Of a DNA stretch of 63,984 nucleotides, positions 4,803-63,410 are shown in pieces. The position numbers and the translations under genes were made by a program. The stretch comes from Octopus bimaculoides (lineage: Eukaryota): contig NC_068984.1 in the NCBI RefSeq assembly GCF_001194135.2, positions 14,727,932 to 14,791,915 on the forward strand. Direction: 5' to 3'. The notes below the pieces were generated by a model, which worked only from the letters and a program-made list of their open reading frames with translations, ran no database searches and was not told the origin of the DNA. Numbering within the stretch: position 1 is the stretch's first letter; each line of letters starts with the position of its first letter.

Positions 4803-4968
4803 ACGTTGGGCTTCTTTCAGTTTTCGTCTACCAAATCCACTCACAAGGCCTCGGTCGGCCCGAGGCTAGAGTAGAAGACACTTGTCCAAGGTGCCACGCA
4901 GTGGAACTGAACCCGGAACCATGTGGTTGGTAAGCAAGCCAGTTACCACACAGCAACTCCTGCGCCTA
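4803..4968 (-). mobile_element. SINE family A 5' half
   Basis: Full tRNA-like head (A- and B-box) on the minus strand. Confidence 0.85.
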
Positions 4969-5031
4969 TATATATTTATATATAAGTATCTATGTATTAT
5001 GTACATGTGCATATATATGTATGTTCGTATA

Positions 5032-34500: not shown

Positions 34501-35870
34501 ATGATGACTGTAAGTACTGCTGTGCTCCATGTGTAATACTAAGCGGTACCATGGTCATACATTTGTACGAATTTTTGTCAGGAGTTGTGTAGTCTGAGAT
34601 CAATCCCGCCTCACTGCACCGTTATGGATTGATGTAGTCTGTTGCTATACAGAACACTTCAATGCTGCACACTATTATGGATTGTTATAACCAACTGCTG
34701 CATTAGGCAGAAACAGTCTGACCTTCACTGTATGGGCAGTTGTTAACTTCGATTAATTCCTGTTCGGCCCAGTATAGACTGTTGAAATCGATACAATTTT
34801 ATCTACCCCGTTAAAATTGGCCGCTGTAATAGATCGATACTGTCTCAACGAAAATAACTAGGTGCGCAACAAAAACATAACTTCATATTCGGAAATCAGA
34901 AATAGCTGCATTTACAGGAAAATCAGCCAATCTCACAAAAGTAGTTGCAAACACGTGGTAAAAATAGTAACGTAACACAATACAAGACAGTTATACGCAC
35001 GACATCAGAATCAGTTAAATATCCGACAACAAACTTCCATACTCAACAAAAGCTGCAACCACACACTCACACAGGCAGATAAGCACATAAGCACACACAA
35101 ACACACACAAAACCACCACCGACAACAACAACAAAACTAGTTACATGCTGAATAAAAAAAACGATTACTTTATGCAAGGTGGTAAAAATAGATTCATGGC
35201 AGTATGAAAAAGTATCGATAGAAATGAAAGCGTTTAGGGATAATAATGAAAAGCAAAAACTACATGTACAGGTTTTTGGTTAATAGAAGTAGTAACAGAA
35301 ACCAGATTTGTTAAGGTCAGTCCGGTTTATTTGTTTAAAAGATTAATTATAATTGAAAGTATTGTACGTCAGTGATTTCAGGTCCCAGCATTGGGTATAG
35401 TTCTTGATTTTTTTTATATATATATTTCAATAATTAATACAGAACTGAGTTTAAATTCCGTTAGATGAAAAATAATTATTCTTTTAATTATTATCGAAGT
35501 AATTACACATAGAAGTCGTTAGTCCAGCAGTGGGTATAGCTCTTGATTTTTTTATACAGAAATATTTCAACAATAACTATATAATTGAGTTTATATTCTG
35601 TTAGAATAGTTATTTTTCTTAGTCTTTTCTAATGTTTAACATGGTCTTCAGTCTTATCGTACATCAGTTTCAAAAAAGCATTGGAATAAAGGCTTAGTAA
35701 AGACCTATAAATTCTTCCGAAAACTTTAGCCTTCCTTCAGTGTAAGTTGACCATCTCTTATGTAGACACCCATAAAATACTGCTTAGTTTATAGAAACAA
35801 TTATTTGCACGATCGAATAGTATCTTTGGAATAGTCTTTAAATAATGATTGCTTCCTATATTACACGCAG

Positions 35871-36057
35871 CAACGTTCAGTGAGATCAAAAATATAATTC
35901 CTTCAACAAGAACAGTTCATACTGGCAAATGATACCGAAGAAATTTCTCCTTTATGATTTGATCGTTCGCAACAACAGACGGACCAAATGTGTGTGCACA
36001 CCAAGGACACGAACGGCTGACAATAGAAAATACCAACTGAATCTGCGCACGACAACG
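35871..36057 (+). other. candidate exon of the mir-981 host transcript
   Basis: Acceptor gcttcctatattacacgcAG (35869-70) and strong donor ACG|GTAAGC (GT at 36058-59) immediately 5' of the hairpin. Confidence 0.45.
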
Positions 36058-36061
36058 GTAA

Positions 36062-36139
36062 GCTATTTTGACGGGTTTCGTGACAGACGAGCATGAAATA
36101 TGTATTTGTTCGTTGTCGACGAAACCTGCCTGAAATAGC
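36062..36139 (+). ncRNA. mir-981: microRNA precursor mir-981 (Mir-76 family); mature 3p ~36109-36131
   Basis: TTCGTTGTCGACGAAACCTGCCT matches the protostome miR-981-3p mature sequence as I recall it. The 5p arm ACGGGTTTCGTGACAGACGAGC (36071-36092) pairs with it, and a basal stem GCTATTT/AAATAGC closes the hairpin. Confidence 0.93.
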
Positions 36140-36493
36140 CAACCAAGACACGATTAAAAACAAACCAAGAGACTGAATCTAAGAGCAGCCTAAGATCACC
36201 AATCGATGCCAACTAACGTTCAACTATTTTCACCTTTTGGAATAAAAAAGAAAAGAATTAAAAATTTAAATTTAAAAGTATTCAAATTTTAGTTTGATTT
36301 CTCACCACGTACAAATGAAACGTTAAAAATCTTTATTTTTTTTTTATGTGGTGAGCGCCATAAAACAAACGGCAACCTGAGTCGTTTCAGTTTCTGTCTT
36401 CGATTGAAGAATTATTTCATTCATGTTCTTATTACTATTGAAGAAAAACATGAACATCACAATTTCCCAATTCTCTTTTCCTTTGTATCTAAG

Positions 36494-36540
36494 CAAAATA
36501 AACCAAAACCTAACGCCAGTGTGTGTTAGTACAACATGAG
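36494..36540 (+). other. candidate downstream exon of the mir-981 host transcript
   Basis: Pyrimidine tract ttctcttttcctttgtatctaAG, then donor GAG|GTAAGC at 36541. Confidence 0.4.
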
Positions 36541-36714
36541 GTAAGCTCCTTGCAATTCGAGTCAGTCGCGCGTTTTCGATTCTTTGTTTTTAAAAAAAAG
36601 CCGTTTCTTTTGTTTTATACGGTGTGTGGTTATTTGCATGTGGGCTACAAGGGAAATATCAAGCATGTGACAAAATGTCTTGGTACTATGTTACTTCTGA
36701 GTTCAATTTCAACC

Positions 36715-37180
36715 AAGATTCACATTACCTTTCATCCCTTCAGGGTCAATAAAATAAGTACCAGTTGAACACTGGGGTCGATATAATTCACTTATCTCCC
36801 CTCCCCCACTAAAACTGATGACCTTGTGCCAAAATTTGAAATGATTATTATTGTGAAGAAAGCGGTGAACAGGTGTTAACGTGTCGAAAAAATGTCTGTT
36901 GGCCTTTCTTCCAGTTCTTTACATTCTGACCGCAAATTCTACCGAAGTCGACTTTGCCTTTCATACTTCTGGGGTCGATAAAACAAAGTACCAGTTTAGT
37001 TCTGAGGTAGAATGAATCGACTAACCTCTCCCACTAAAATTCATGATCTGGTTCTAAAATTTGAAATAACTAATATTTTGAAAAATTTTACGTTGGCAGA
37101 ATCGTTAGCGCATCGGATAAAATTCATTGAGGTATTTGTTCTGGATCGTTATGTTCTGAGCTCAAACACCGCTAAGAACA
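36715..37180 (+). mobile_element. cluster of three tandem SINE family B fragments
   Basis: Repeated cctttcatcc/gcctttcatac cores at ~36730 and ~36958; head ttggcagaatcgttagcg at ~37094. Confidence 0.7.
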
Positions 37181-38255: not shown

Positions 38256-38299
38256 TATATAAAAAAAAAGGGACAGAAAGCTAAGTTTATATACGTAAC

Positions 38300-38600
38300 A
38301 TGTGAAATCGCGTGGCCTAGGTGTTCACGATCGTCGGATTGTGGGCTCAATTTCCGAACGGAGCAGTGCGTTGTGTTCTTGAGCAAACCACTTCATTTCA
38401 TGTTGCTCCAGTCTACTCAGCTGTAAACGGGTCACCACCCTGCGACAGAATAGCCTTCCGACCAAGGGGTGGATTTGTCAACCTGCTTTCCTAGAGAGCG
38501 GGGTGGCATTATCCGAAAGCTACAGCAATGCGAAGTGCATTGTGACCGGCGATGTATAACAACATCTGGTCGTCTGGTCGTCGATTACGTGATCACGTGA
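38300..38600 (+). mobile_element. SINE family E (core shared with family D)
   Basis: gttgtgttcttgagcaaaccactt..gctccagtctactcagctg. Confidence 0.65.
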
Positions 38601-54222: not shown

Positions 54223-54914
54223 AAAAAATGATACTTTTGATAAATCATTAGTTTCATTCCGTTACATGTCTGTCCACTCTGTCATCTTGTTTTTCCTACG
54301 AACTTACGACTGTTATAGAAAGGAACTTGGCTTCGATTTTTGTTTCGAATTCCTTATCTTCATCTATGTCGCCAAAGTGTTTGCAAAACCAAGAACATCA
54401 CAACTATTTTCAGGTTTCGTACCTCTATACCAAATTCTTCATCTTTCAAAGAGTGAAGATGATCGAAACGTTATAGAGTTAGATTAAATTCCAAAGAACT
54501 TCATGGCTCTAAATCTGGTACTTCGTTACACCGAGATGGAATCTTGTATAAATGGAAGAAGGGAATATATTGTCGCTGTCGCTGACGTCACTGATGATGT
54601 CATCATAATTATCATTTAGTCCCAATTCCAGCCCTGAACAGAAGATCTATTATCAGAGATAGTCTTACAGTAACCATACCATCTTGTTTTCAGACATTGT
54701 AAAGTCTAGGGTTGCATCGTCTAATGCGTCCATTACTTTTTAACACGCTAAAGTGTGACTTGAGGGAGATATAAGTGCTATTTCTAATAAGGTTAGCGAT
54801 CGTGTAAAGATTCCTTCATTGGCTCGAAGTTACTATAGTATAGTGTGAAGGTGTGTACATATGTACTGTGTATATATTTATAGGTATGTATATGTCTTTG
54901 ATTAACAACGGTAA

Positions 54915-55285
54915 GCGCAGGCATAGCAATGCGGTTGAGAAGCTCGTTTCGCAAACACGTTGATTCGAGTTCGATCCCATCGAACAGCATCTTTGACAAA
55001 TGTTTTCGATAGCCCTAAGATGATCAATGCCTTGTGAGTGAATTTGATGGACAGAAACTGTATGGAAGCCTGTCGTATTTGTCTATGAGTGTGCCCATTT
55101 GTGCTTGTGCTTGTCTCCACCTCACAGCACGAAAACCATTGTTTGTATGTTTACGTCTCCGTAAATTAGCGTTTCAACAAAAGCGACCGATGAACTAGTA
55201 AGTGCTGATGTTCATCTGTTTGACTTAACACCACAAGGGAATGCTCCAGTACGACCAAAGTCTAATGACTAAAAGAAGCAAAAGG
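54915..55285 (+). mobile_element. SINE family A-related, old copy
   Basis: aagcgcaggcatagcaatgcggt..gccttgtgagtgaatttg..ggacagaaactg..aatgctccagta. Confidence 0.6.
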
Positions 55286-57513: not shown

Positions 57514-58000
57514 ATTCTTTTATTTGTTTCAGTCATCTGACTCCGGCCATGCTGGAGCACCGCCTTTAGTCGAGCAAATCGGCCCCAGGACTTATTCTTT
57601 GTAAGCCTAGTACTTATTCTATCGGTCTCTTTTGCCGATCCACTAAGTTACATATAAATACGACGGGCTTCTTTCAGTTTCCTATTTCTTTATTGTCCAC
57701 AAGGGGCTAAATATAGAGGGGACAAACAAGGACAAATGGATAAAGTCGATTACATCGACTCCAGTGCGTAACTGGTACTTAATGTATCGACCCCGAAAGG
57801 ATGAAAGGCAAAGTTGACCTCGGCGCAGTTTGAACTCAGAACGTAACGGCATACGAAATACCGCTAAGCATTTCACCCGACGCACTAACGTTTCTGCCAA
57901 CTCGCCGCATTCTTTCAGTTTCCGTCTACCAAATCCATTCACAAGGCTTTGGTCCGCTAGAGGCTATAGTAGGAGACACTTGCCCAAGGTGCCACGCAAT
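57514..58000 (-). mobile_element. SINE family A interrupted by a family B insertion
   Basis: Tail half at 57514-57682 and head half at 57910-58000. Confidence 0.85.
57683..57909 (-). mobile_element. SINE family B, full length, nested, 14-bp TSD
   Basis: TSD ttctttcagtttcc at 57669-57682 and 57910-57923. Head GGCGAGTTGGCAGAAACGTTAG, B-box GAGTTCAAA, central GCCTTTCATCCTTTCGGGGTCGAT. Confidence 0.92.
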
Positions 58001-62493: not shown

Positions 62494-62731
62494 TATTTCT
62501 GTATTGCCCACAAGGGGCTACACACAAAGGGGACAAACAAGGACAGACAAACGGTTTAAGTCGATTATATCGACCCCAGTGCGTAACTGGTACTTATTTA
62601 ATCGACCCCGAAAGGATGAAAGGCAAAGTTGACCTCGGCGGAATTTGATCTGAGAACGTAGCGGCAGACGAAATACCGCTAAGCATTTCGCCCAGCGTGC
62701 TAACGTTTCTGCCAGCTCGCCGCCTTTAGAG
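62494..62731 (-). mobile_element. SINE family B, full length, 18-bp TSD
   Basis: TSD agctatggagatgtttct at 62476-62493 and 62732-62749. Confidence 0.93.
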
Positions 62732-63204: not shown

Positions 63205-63410
63205 CAAGCTGGCAGAATTGTTAGGACGCTGAACAAAATGCCTAGCGGTATTTCGTCCGGTATTTCTGAGTTCAAATTCTGCGTAAGTCGGCTTTACCTT
63301 TCATCCTTTCAGGGTTGATAAAATAAGTATCAGTTGAACACTGGAGTCGACGTAATTGATTTAACACCTCCTCCCGGACTTGCTGGCTTTGTGCCAACAT
63401 TTGAAACCAA
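63205..63410 (+). mobile_element. SINE family B
   Basis: aagctggcagaattgttagg..gagttcaaatt..cctttcatcctttcagggttgataa. Confidence 0.8.

What the first reader, a model, noticed from the sequence alone, without database searches (positions are those of the whole stretch)
36058..36139. mir-981 hairpin directly abutting a 5' splice site
The donor ACG|GTAAGC overlaps the start of the basal stem (GCTATTT begins at intron position +5). U1 binding and Microprocessor cropping would therefore compete or couple on the same nucleotides. A matching acceptor and a short exon follow at 36494-36540. Splice-site-adjacent miRNAs are known in other animals, but I know of no such description for this family in cephalopods.
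Basis: partly seen in the sequence, partly recalled or inferred. Interest (0 to 1): 0.72.

Follow-up and report, generated by a model that had tools for sequence, protein, structure and literature searches.

The report
mir-981 hairpin next to a splice-donor motif
A genuine, ancient microRNA gene (mir-981/Mir-76) has a strong splice-donor-like motif right at the foot of its hairpin; this matches a known arrangement (splice-site-overlapping microRNA), but no data here show that the site is actually spliced.

Summary
Window 36061-36140 (+) is a bona fide mir-981/Mir-76 hairpin (Rfam 63.3 bits against a cut-off of 51). ACG|GTAAGC sits at 36055-36063, so intron positions +5 and +6 are the first two pairs of the lower stem.

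The motif is unlikely to be pure noise:
- On a crude donor matrix it ranks about 13th of 3937 plus-strand GTs.
- The 8-mer GGTAAGCT occurs only twice in 64 kb, at 36057 and 36540, both on the microRNA strand.
- The 500 nt starting at 36051 hold more strong sense-strand donor-like sites (three) than any other 500-nt stretch of the window.

In the folded RNA, five of the six bases that would pair with U1 are themselves paired. U1 binding and the hairpin would therefore exclude each other.

Use of the site is unproven. None of 18 other mir-981 loci has a donor there, including two with the same lower stem. The acceptor is mediocre (AAG). The proposed 47-nt "exon" is closed in all three frames and contains a textbook poly(A) signal. 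I could reach no transcript or cephalopod orthologue.

If real, this is a 5' splice-site-overlapping microRNA, a class already described in mammals. I put the chance that the donor is spliced at about 45% and rate interest as modest.

The parts
36061..36140 (+). mir-981 / Mir-76 pri-miRNA hairpin, lower stem to lower stem
   Evidence: Rfam RF01926 at 63.3 bits against a gathering score of 51. MFE -39.7 kcal/mol, z -4.98. Blastn conservation to locus L022 spans 36061-36139 and stops there.
36109..36131 (+). mature miR-981-3p (seed UCGUUGU)
   Evidence: The first 21 nt are identical to the arthropod-type loci. It matches the read-supported bgl-miR-981-3p at 22 of 23 bases (PMC12261956). Ovu-Mir-76 target seed ACAACGAA (PMC9699675 supplement).
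36071..36092 (+). predicted 5p (star) arm; the Drosha 5' cut is inferred at 36070|36071
   Evidence: Inferred from the 2-nt 3' overhang rule applied to the MFE structure. No small-RNA reads were available.
36062..36070 (+). 5' strand of the lower stem (GCUAUUUUG), pairing with 36130 and 36132-36139
   Evidence: The same GCTATTT/AAATAGC stem is present in L022 and L005. Every mir-981 locus folded has a 7-12 bp lower stem, each of different sequence.
36055..36063 (+). 5' splice-site-like motif ACG|GUAAGC (GU = 36058-59). It has six contiguous bases complementary to the U1 5' end (-1 to +5). Positions +5/+6 lie in the lower stem.
   Evidence: Sequence read directly. Rank about 13 of 3937 on a crude donor matrix. 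P(unpaired) <= 0.03 for five of the six U1-pairing bases. Usage is not shown.
36142..36144 (+). ACC, predicted to pair with G36057-G36058-U36059. This extends the stem beyond a 2x2 internal loop and sequesters the donor GU.
   Evidence: MFE and ensemble folds.
35893..35923 (+). TATA-like TATAAT (35893-98) and Inr-like TCATACT (A at 35919). If used, the first exon would be 35919-36057 (139 nt).
   Evidence: Read from the sequence only. This is a consensus-level inference, and such motifs are common in AT-rich DNA. An alternative upstream acceptor, CAG|C at 35871, ranks 163 of 3301.
36348..36356 (+). third strong sense-strand donor-like site, GUG|GUGAGC (GU at 36351)
   Evidence: Rank about 14 of 3937. 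At the same threshold the island has no site on the minus strand.
36470..36493 (+). pyrimidine tract plus AG: the candidate 3' splice site (UCUAAG|C)
   Evidence: Rank 77 of 3301 on a crude acceptor matrix; the -3 base is A.
36494..36540 (+). candidate 47-nt exon, non-coding
   Evidence: Stop codons in all three frames, and an ATG at 36535 five nt before the next donor (read).
36497..36527 (+). composite poly(A)-signal-like element: AAUAAA (36497-502), CA (36517-18), UGUGUGUU (36520-27)
   Evidence: The only match to AATAAA-N8-28-CA-N0-6-TGTGTG on either strand of the window.
36538..36546 (+). second strong donor-like site, GAG|GUAAGC
   Evidence: Rank 6 of 3937. It shares the 8-mer GGTAAGCT with the 36057 site.
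35606..36689 (.). 1.08-kb island, single-copy within the window, that carries all of the above. It is bounded by a local duplication upstream and by SINE-like copies downstream.
   Evidence: Self-blast of the window.

Best explanation
This is a canonical, Drosha- and Dicer-processed Mir-76/mir-981 gene on the plus strand (shown).

A strong 5' splice-site consensus sits 4 nt below its lower stem (shown). I infer that it is most likely the donor of an upstream, non-coding or 5'-UTR exon of a Pol II host transcript. That would place the hairpin at the extreme 5' end of an intron, in the 5' splice-site-overlapping (SO) miRNA configuration.

Mechanism (inferred):
1. The donor is transcribed about 80 nt before the 3' arm of the hairpin, so U1 snRNP can engage it first.
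2. Once the hairpin forms, G36057, G36058, U36059, G36062 and C36063 are base-paired. The GU then lies 12-13 nt below the Drosha cut, at the single-strand/double-strand junction that Microprocessor reads.
3. A given transcript can therefore either keep U1 bound and be spliced, or fold and be cropped.
4. Cropping at 36070|36071 would leave the upstream exon with a 13-nt intron stub.
5. miRNA output and spliced host RNA would thus be alternative fates. U1 may also help recruit Microprocessor or favour elongation past the nearby poly(A) signal.
For: - Hairpin identity.
- Conserved mature sequence.
- The lower stem is a conserved structural feature. All 12 folded loci have one, with different sequences, and L022 and L005 have the same stem as the window.
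- Donor strength and rarity: rank about 13 of 3937. GGTAAGCT occurs only at 36057 and 36540, both on the miRNA strand.
- Sense-strand bias: three sites scoring >= 9.4 bits on the plus strand within 36058-36541, against none on the minus strand of the island. This is the densest 500-nt stretch of the window for such sites.
- The whole arrangement lies in a single-copy island.
- Donor bases are paired in the ensemble, P(unpaired) <= 0.03.
- Precedent: 5' SO miRNAs, with splice sites at the single-strand/double-strand junction or in the stem, compete with Microprocessor (PMC3794580; PMC6097652). In humans, 57 of 1263 intragenic miRNAs sit at exon-intron junctions (PMC7566567).
Against: - No transcript, junction or small-RNA evidence was obtainable. 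Ten local ORFs, plus a hypothetical spliced ORF, are absent from the protein collection. A six-frame query of the locus found nothing.
- The donor is absent from all 18 other mir-981 loci. In the two loci with the same lower stem, the bases upstream are CATAGA and ATGTT. Sequence conservation ends exactly at 36061/62.
- The only nearby acceptor is mediocre and of AAG type.
- The proposed exon carries a strong poly(A)-like signal.
- Chance donor-like motifs do occur. L022 has ACAGTAAGT in its terminal loop. The 12-mer ACAACGGTAAGC recurs at 54905 in unrelated sequence. A second cluster of donor-like sites lies at 54.85-55.49 kb.
- CpG enrichment is only modest, so there is no clear promoter signature.
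- The splice-site matrices are crude and were written from memory.
Confidence: 0.45

Rival explanations
1. The donor-like motif is a coincidence. The miRNA is cropped from an unspliced, short pri-miRNA that ends at the poly(A) signal near 36497-36527, or from the interior of a long intron or intergenic transcript. GTAAGC arose by chance next to the fixed GC of the lower stem. The GGU at 36057-59 matters, if at all, only as a 3-bp extension of the stem that pairs with ACC 36142-44.
For: - The donor is not conserved in any of the 18 other mir-981 loci, including the two with an identical lower stem.
- A textbook poly(A) composite lies 360 nt downstream on the same strand and is unique in the window.
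- The acceptor is weak at position -3.
- Biomphalaria miR-981 is annotated as intergenic (PMC12261956).
- Chance strong donor motifs are seen elsewhere, in the L022 loop and at 54905.
- With a per-hairpin chance of about 1-2% and well over 100 miRNA genes per genome, a few such coincidences per genome are expected (inference).
Against: - The exact placement has a chance of about 0.2%.
- The same rare 8-mer recurs 483 nt downstream on the same strand.
- Three top-ranked donor-like sites lie on the sense strand against none on the antisense strand of the island.
Confidence: 0.4
2. The motif is a functional U1 snRNP binding site that is not, or only rarely, used for splicing. It acts in the U1/poly(A) axis (telescripting): it suppresses premature cleavage at the nearby poly(A) signal and promotes elongation or Microprocessor recruitment on the sense transcript.
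For: - Three strong U1-type sites are clustered on the sense strand, at 36058, 36351 and 36541, and they flank a strong poly(A)-like signal at 36497.
- The literature reports a positive effect of a 5' splice site and U1 on Drosha recruitment for intronic miRNAs (discussed in PMC3794580).
Against: - This is purely motif-based.
- The donor bases are sequestered once the hairpin folds.
- The motif is not conserved outside this lineage.
Confidence: 0.1
3. This is a mirtron or 5'-defined tailed mirtron: splicing rather than Drosha defines the 5' end of the pre-miRNA.
For: The hairpin lies at the very start of the putative intron.
Against: - The predicted 5p arm starts at intron position +14, not +1.
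- A 9-bp lower stem lies between the splice site and the cut. Relatives that lack any donor have an equivalent lower stem.
- The family is an ancient canonical miRNA family.
Confidence: 0.02

Closest known systems
5' splice-site-overlapping (SO) miRNAs of mammals, e.g. miR-1204/PVT1, miR-638/DNM2 and miR-555/ASH1L (Mattioli et al. 2013, PMC3794580); also miR-412, miR-202 and miR-222/MIR222HG (Melamed et al. 2013; PMC7566567)
   Same: A splice-site consensus lies at the single-strand/double-strand junction or lower stem of a pri-miRNA hairpin, so the spliceosome and Microprocessor act on the same nucleotides. The host is probably non-coding. A very short exon lies nearby (MIR222HG has a 44-bp mini-exon).
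   Different: Use of the splice site is undocumented here, whereas the definition of the class rests on spliced ESTs or RNA-seq. The miRNA is an ancient protostome family in a presumed mollusc. The hairpin is entirely intronic apart from its foot. The donor is absent from relatives, so it would be a lineage-specific gain.
Canonical intronic miRNAs whose processing is enhanced by the flanking 5' splice site and U1 (miR-211 in melastatin; plant intronic miRNAs), as discussed in PMC3794580
   Same: The donor lies upstream of an intronic hairpin, and coupling between U1 and Microprocessor is possible.
   Different: In those cases the donor is separated from the hairpin and does not base-pair into it. 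Here five of the six U1-pairing bases are sequestered by the fold.
Mirtrons and tailed mirtrons
   Same: The hairpin is at the end of an intron.
   Different: The pre-miRNA end does not coincide with the splice site (+14). A conserved lower stem is present, which implies Drosha dependence.
mir-981 (Rfam RF01926) / Mir-76 (MirGeneDB) genes of other protostomes
   Same: The same mature sequence, hairpin architecture and lower stem, and 3p-arm dominance in the snail (PMC12261956).
   Different: None of the 18 loci examined has a donor motif at the hairpin base. The window carries A at mature position 11, as arthropods do, but has the lophotrochozoan-type ...CCUGCCU 3' end.

Membership tests
mir-981 / Mir-76 microRNA family | Covariance-model match above the curated threshold | tested here: met
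   RF01926 at 63.3 bits against a gathering score of 51, full-length match. RF03966 (mir-76) hits the same place at 35.6 bits, below its threshold of 75.
mir-981 / Mir-76 microRNA family | Conserved mature 3p sequence and seed | tested here: met
   21 of 21 bases identical to the arthropod-type loci. 22 of 23 to bgl-miR-981-3p. The seed matches the Ovu-Mir-76 target site ACAACGAA.
mir-981 / Mir-76 microRNA family | Stable imperfect hairpin with a lower stem of about one helical turn | tested here: met
   MFE -39.7 kcal/mol, z -4.98. A 9-bp lower stem; relatives have comparable stems.
mir-981 / Mir-76 microRNA family | Small-RNA reads from both arms with 2-nt offsets | not testable with these tools
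   No small-RNA data for the source organism were available.
Splice-site-overlapping (SO) miRNA | Splice-site consensus inside the hairpin or at its single-strand/double-strand junction | tested here: met
   ACG|GUAAGC at 36055-63; positions +5/+6 are the first lower-stem pairs. Rank about 13 of 3937.
Splice-site-overlapping (SO) miRNA | The splice site is used in real transcripts (spliced ESTs or RNA-seq junctions) | not testable with these tools
   Indirect routes through the protein collection gave nothing. No transcriptome was accessible.
Splice-site-overlapping (SO) miRNA | Reciprocal dependence of splicing and cropping | not testable with these tools
   This needs a minigene or knock-down experiment. 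Only the thermodynamic exclusivity was computed.
Splice-site-overlapping (SO) miRNA | Splice site conserved in orthologous loci (supportive, not defining) | tested here: inconclusive
   Absent in 18 non-orthologous-lineage mir-981 loci. Orthologues from close relatives could not be obtained.
Mirtron / tailed mirtron | The pre-miRNA 5' end coincides with intron position +1, with no lower stem | tested here: not met
   The predicted 5p start is 36071, intron position +14. A 9-bp lower stem lies between the two.

The most novel reading that the evidence does not exclude
An ancient protostome miRNA (Mir-76/mir-981) has, in this lineage only, acquired a functional 5' splice site at its basal junction. 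Its output would then be set by a kinetic choice between U1/spliceosome engagement and Microprocessor cropping, with a nearby poly(A) signal as a third possible fate. That would be a conserved-miRNA, invertebrate example of a 5' SO-miRNA, and a dated evolutionary gain of splice-coupled miRNA regulation.
Probability: 0.35. Interest if true: 0.45.

Novelty: new member of a known kind. Interest (0 to 1): 0.3.

Why it matters
If the donor is used, this locus would give a clean natural experiment. The hairpin and lower stem are the same as in relatives, but the donor is present only here. That would allow a direct test of how a splice site at the basal junction changes miRNA yield. It would also extend SO-miRNAs beyond mammals to a deeply conserved invertebrate miRNA.

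If the donor is not used, the finding is an ordinary conserved miRNA gene with a coincidental motif. Either way the concept (spliceosome versus Microprocessor competition) is already established, so the gain is incremental.

Tried and rejected
1. Transcripts and orthologues through the protein collection.
- Exact look-up of 9 local ORFs plus a hypothetical exon1-exon2 spliced ORF found none in the collection.
- A 936-aa concatenation of all six-frame open segments across 35.76-36.69 kb, run in the search for homologous proteins, gave no hit at E <= 0.01.

2. Collection scans with the mature-miRNA pattern.
- Metagenome contigs gave 22 loci. About 18 are real mir-981 hairpins, and none is a close relative of the window.
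- Bacterial and archaeal genomes gave one chance hit.
- Viral contigs gave none.

3. Literature and supplements searched for cephalopod Mir-76 flanking sequence or a host gene.
- The Zolotarov et al. supplements list only Ovu-Mir-76 target sites.
- The MirGeneDB papers hold no sequences.

4. Host-gene search.
- I inspected all non-repeat open segments of at least 40 aa by eye. None looked coding apart from degenerate reverse-transcriptase remnants.
- I ran no further search on this.

5. Organism identity.
- Homologues of a transposon ORF occur only in unnamed ENA assemblies, so 'cephalopod' is unconfirmed.

6. Promoter signature from CpG content: only modest enrichment, comparable to the SINE copies.

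7. A consensus fold of 12 loci recovered only the upper stem, because the lower stems are not alignable. I replaced it with individual folds.

8. The mirtron reading was rejected on geometry.

9. I checked whether the donor belongs to a repeat. It does not. Two of the five plus-strand GGTAAGC sites are SINE-internal, and a 12-mer recurs at 54905 without any flanking similarity.

Full report
**1. What is in the sequence**

Rfam's mir-981 model (RF01926) matches window 36061-36140 on the plus strand. The match scores 63.3 bits against a gathering score of 51 (E 3.5e-17) and covers the whole model. The related mir-76 model hits the same place below its threshold.

The 121-nt context folds to -39.7 kcal/mol. 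The z-score against 200 dinucleotide shuffles is -4.98, and no shuffle folds as well.

The 3p arm at 36109-36131 reads UUCGUUGUCGACGAAACCUGCCU.
- Its first 21 nt are identical to the termite- and ant-type loci found in metagenomes.
- It differs at one base from the read-supported 23-nt bgl-miR-981-3p of Biomphalaria (PMC12261956).
- Octopus vulgaris is reported to have a Mir-76 with the matching seed site ACAACGAA (PMC9699675 supplement).

The hairpin is therefore a real, canonical Mir-76/mir-981 gene on the plus strand.

**2. The donor motif**

Read directly...CGACAACG ends at 36057 and GTAAGC occupies 36058-36063. G36062 and C36063 (intron +5/+6) are the first two pairs of a 9-bp lower stem, in which 36062-36070 pairs with 36130 and 36132-36139.

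I used the snail mature 3' end to place the Drosha 3' cut at 36131|36132, and the 2-nt overhang rule then puts the 5' cut at 36070|36071. On that geometry the donor GU lies 12-13 nt below the cut. That is the single-strand/double-strand junction Microprocessor measures from. This step is inference from established Microprocessor geometry, not a measurement.

The motif offers six contiguous bases of U1 complementarity (-1 to +5).

**3. Is it more than chance?**

GGTAAGCT occurs only twice in 64 kb, at 36057 and 36540. Both are on the plus strand, and there is none on the minus strand.

On a crude donor matrix, with frequencies written from memory, 36058 ranks about 13th and 36541 ranks 6th of 3937 plus-strand GTs. 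A third site, 36351 (GUG|GUGAGC), ranks about 14th.

The 500 nt starting at 36051 is the densest stretch of the window for such sites. It holds three on the plus strand, against none on the minus strand of the island at the same threshold.

All of this lies in a 1.08-kb single-copy island (35606-36689) between repeats.

A site of this rank falling within +/-5 nt of the basal junction has a chance of about 0.2%. Allowing either side of the hairpin and either type of splice site raises that to about 1-2%.

Several points temper this:
- A second cluster of donor-like sites lies at 54.85-55.49 kb.
- The 12-mer ACAACGGTAAGC recurs at 54905 in unrelated sequence.
- L022 carries ACAGTAAGT in its terminal loop.
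- With more than 100 miRNA genes per genome, a few coincidences of this kind are expected.

**4. Comparison with other mir-981 loci**

A scan of metagenome contigs with the mature pattern returned 22 loci. Thirteen pass the Rfam gathering score, and about 18 look like real hairpins. They include arthropod-type and lophotrochozoan-type sequences.

Two loci, L022 and L005, have the same lower stem as the window (GCTATTT...AAATAGC). Upstream of it they read CATAGA and ATGTT rather than GGTAA. Blastn similarity between the window and L022 spans exactly 36061-36139.

No locus has a donor-like site scoring 5.5 bits or more at the hairpin base. Folded one at a time, every locus has a 7-12 bp lower stem made of different sequence.

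Two conclusions follow:
- The lower stem is a selected structural feature, so the donor's +5/+6 bases are fixed by the stem.
- The GUAA in front of them is not a property of the family. It is at most a lineage-specific gain.

I could not reach orthologues from close relatives, which would be the informative comparison.

**5. Structural consequence**

Partition-function folding in three contexts (200, 382 and 670 nt) gives P(unpaired) <= 0.03 for G36057, G36058, U36059, G36062 and C36063. Only A36060 and A36061 are free. GGU pairs with ACC 36142-44 beyond a 2x2 internal loop.

If the site is a donor, U1 pairing and the Microprocessor substrate exclude each other on one RNA molecule.

**6. The proposed acceptor and short exon**

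A good pyrimidine tract precedes AG at 36492-93. However, the -3 base is A, and the site ranks 77th of 3301. A site of that quality is expected about every 800 nt.

The 47-nt segment 36494-36540 has stops in all three frames. An ATG lies five nt before the next donor.

The segment also contains AAUAAA (36497-502), CA (36517-18) and UGUGUGUU (36520-27). This is the only such composite on either strand of the window.

The region can therefore be read equally well in two ways: as the 3' end of a short pri-miRNA of about 600 nt, or as a choice point between polyadenylation and use of the 36541 donor.

Upstream, TATAAT (35893) and an Inr-like TCATACT (A at 35919) would give a 139-nt first exon. This is consensus-level inference only. 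CpG content offers no clear promoter signature.

**7. Transcript and orthologue evidence**

None could be obtained.
- Ten local ORFs, including a hypothetical spliced product, are not in the protein collection.
- A six-frame query of the locus found nothing.
- No coding exon of a host gene was evident among the non-repeat open segments.
- The only protein signal is a degenerate non-LTR retrotransposon on the minus strand at 40.7-46.9 kb.
- Relatives of that element sit in unnamed ENA assemblies, so I could not confirm that the organism is a cephalopod.

The miRNA's ...CCUGCCU 3' end, and the lower stem it shares with L005 and L022, fit a lophotrochozoan.

**8. Interpretation**

The best-supported reading, at about 45%, is a 5' splice-site-overlapping miRNA. 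The hairpin would sit at the start of an intron of a non-coding or 5'-UTR host transcript, and splicing and cropping would be alternative fates.

The rivals are:
- A coincidental motif next to an unspliced or deep-intronic pri-miRNA, about 40%.
- A U1 site acting without splicing to suppress the nearby poly(A) signal or aid Microprocessor recruitment, about 10%.
- A mirtron-like pathway, effectively excluded by the +14 offset and the conserved lower stem.

**9. Comparison with what is known**

SO-miRNAs are an established class. Mattioli et al. list 5' SO miRNAs with splice sites at the single-strand/double-strand junction or in the stem, and they show mutual antagonism for miR-34b (PMC3794580). 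Pianigiani et al. count 52 in humans (PMC6097652). Sun et al. find 57 of 1263 intragenic human miRNAs at exon-intron junctions, and describe a 44-bp mini-exon overlapping pri-miR-222 (PMC7566567).

The present case meets the sequence-level criterion for the class. The defining criterion, documented use of the splice site, is untestable here.

**10. Verdict**

If real, this is a new member of a known kind, in a new clade and for an ancient miRNA. Interest is modest. RNA-seq junctions and alignment of cephalopod orthologues would settle it.

Noticed in passing
window 36497-36527 (+): A textbook-looking poly(A) site, AAUAAA-N15-CA-UGUGUGUU, lies inside the proposed 47-nt exon, 360 nt downstream of the hairpin. 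It is the only composite of this form on either strand of the window.
   Followed up: partly
window 36535-36541 (+): An ATG lies five nt upstream of the second strong donor (ACAACAUGAG|GUAAGC). It could be a start codon split by an intron. No downstream coding exon was identified.
   Followed up: no
window 36302-36309 and 36348-36355: An 8-bp inverted repeat, CTCACCAC...GTGGTGAG, lies within the putative intron. Its 3' arm is the third donor-like site (36351), and its complement scores as a minus-strand donor-like site (36305).
   Followed up: no
window 21062-21153 (-): Rfam reports a tRNA match (35.5 bits) with a 20-nt insertion after the anticodon loop. ARAGORN finds no tRNA anywhere in the window. 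The match lies next to SINE-like copies at 21249-21354, so it may be an intron-containing tRNA, a pseudogene or a tRNA-derived SINE head.
   Followed up: partly
window 40764-46900 (-): Degenerate non-LTR retrotransposon remnants, with weak sub-threshold RVT_1 and zf-RVT Pfam hits (both below the curated cut-offs). The closest ORF relatives (60-70% aa identity) are on Mb-scale contigs of the unnamed ENA assemblies ERZ25066843 and ERZ25066847.
   Followed up: partly
window 36690-36860, 36916-37085, 63261-63406, 62557-62656, 57743-57847, 51666-51765, 23300-23432, 21249-21354 and others: A SINE-like repeat family of about 100-170 bp has at least 10 copies in both orientations. Two copies directly bound the miRNA island downstream. 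Another SINE type (4890-4990, 39550-39650) carries an internal GGTAAGC.
   Followed up: partly
window 35385-35465 and 35524-35605: A local direct duplication of about 82 bp at 83% identity lies immediately upstream of the single-copy island.
   Followed up: no
window 54905-54916 vs 36052-36063: The 12-mer ACAACGGTAAGC is shared with the donor site, with no similarity in the flanks. It lies at the edge of a tRNA-like or SINE-like segment (GGTTCGAGTTCGATCCC-type box at about 54960-54980).
   Followed up: partly
window 36119; alignment A1 column 83: Mature position 11 is A, as in the arthropod-type loci, whereas all other lophotrochozoan-type loci have U. The opposing 5p base is G in the window (a G.A mismatch) and A in L022 and L005 (an A-U pair).
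   Followed up: no
window 38270-38900: A single-copy block with about 50% GC and the highest CpG count in the window (21 per 300 bp). It has open frames on both strands, and neither Pfam nor Rfam matches it.
   Followed up: partly
L013 and L020 (both from WGS set JAAUYG01): One metagenome assembly holds two different lophotrochozoan-type mir-981 hairpins. They come from either two paralogues or two host species.
   Followed up: no
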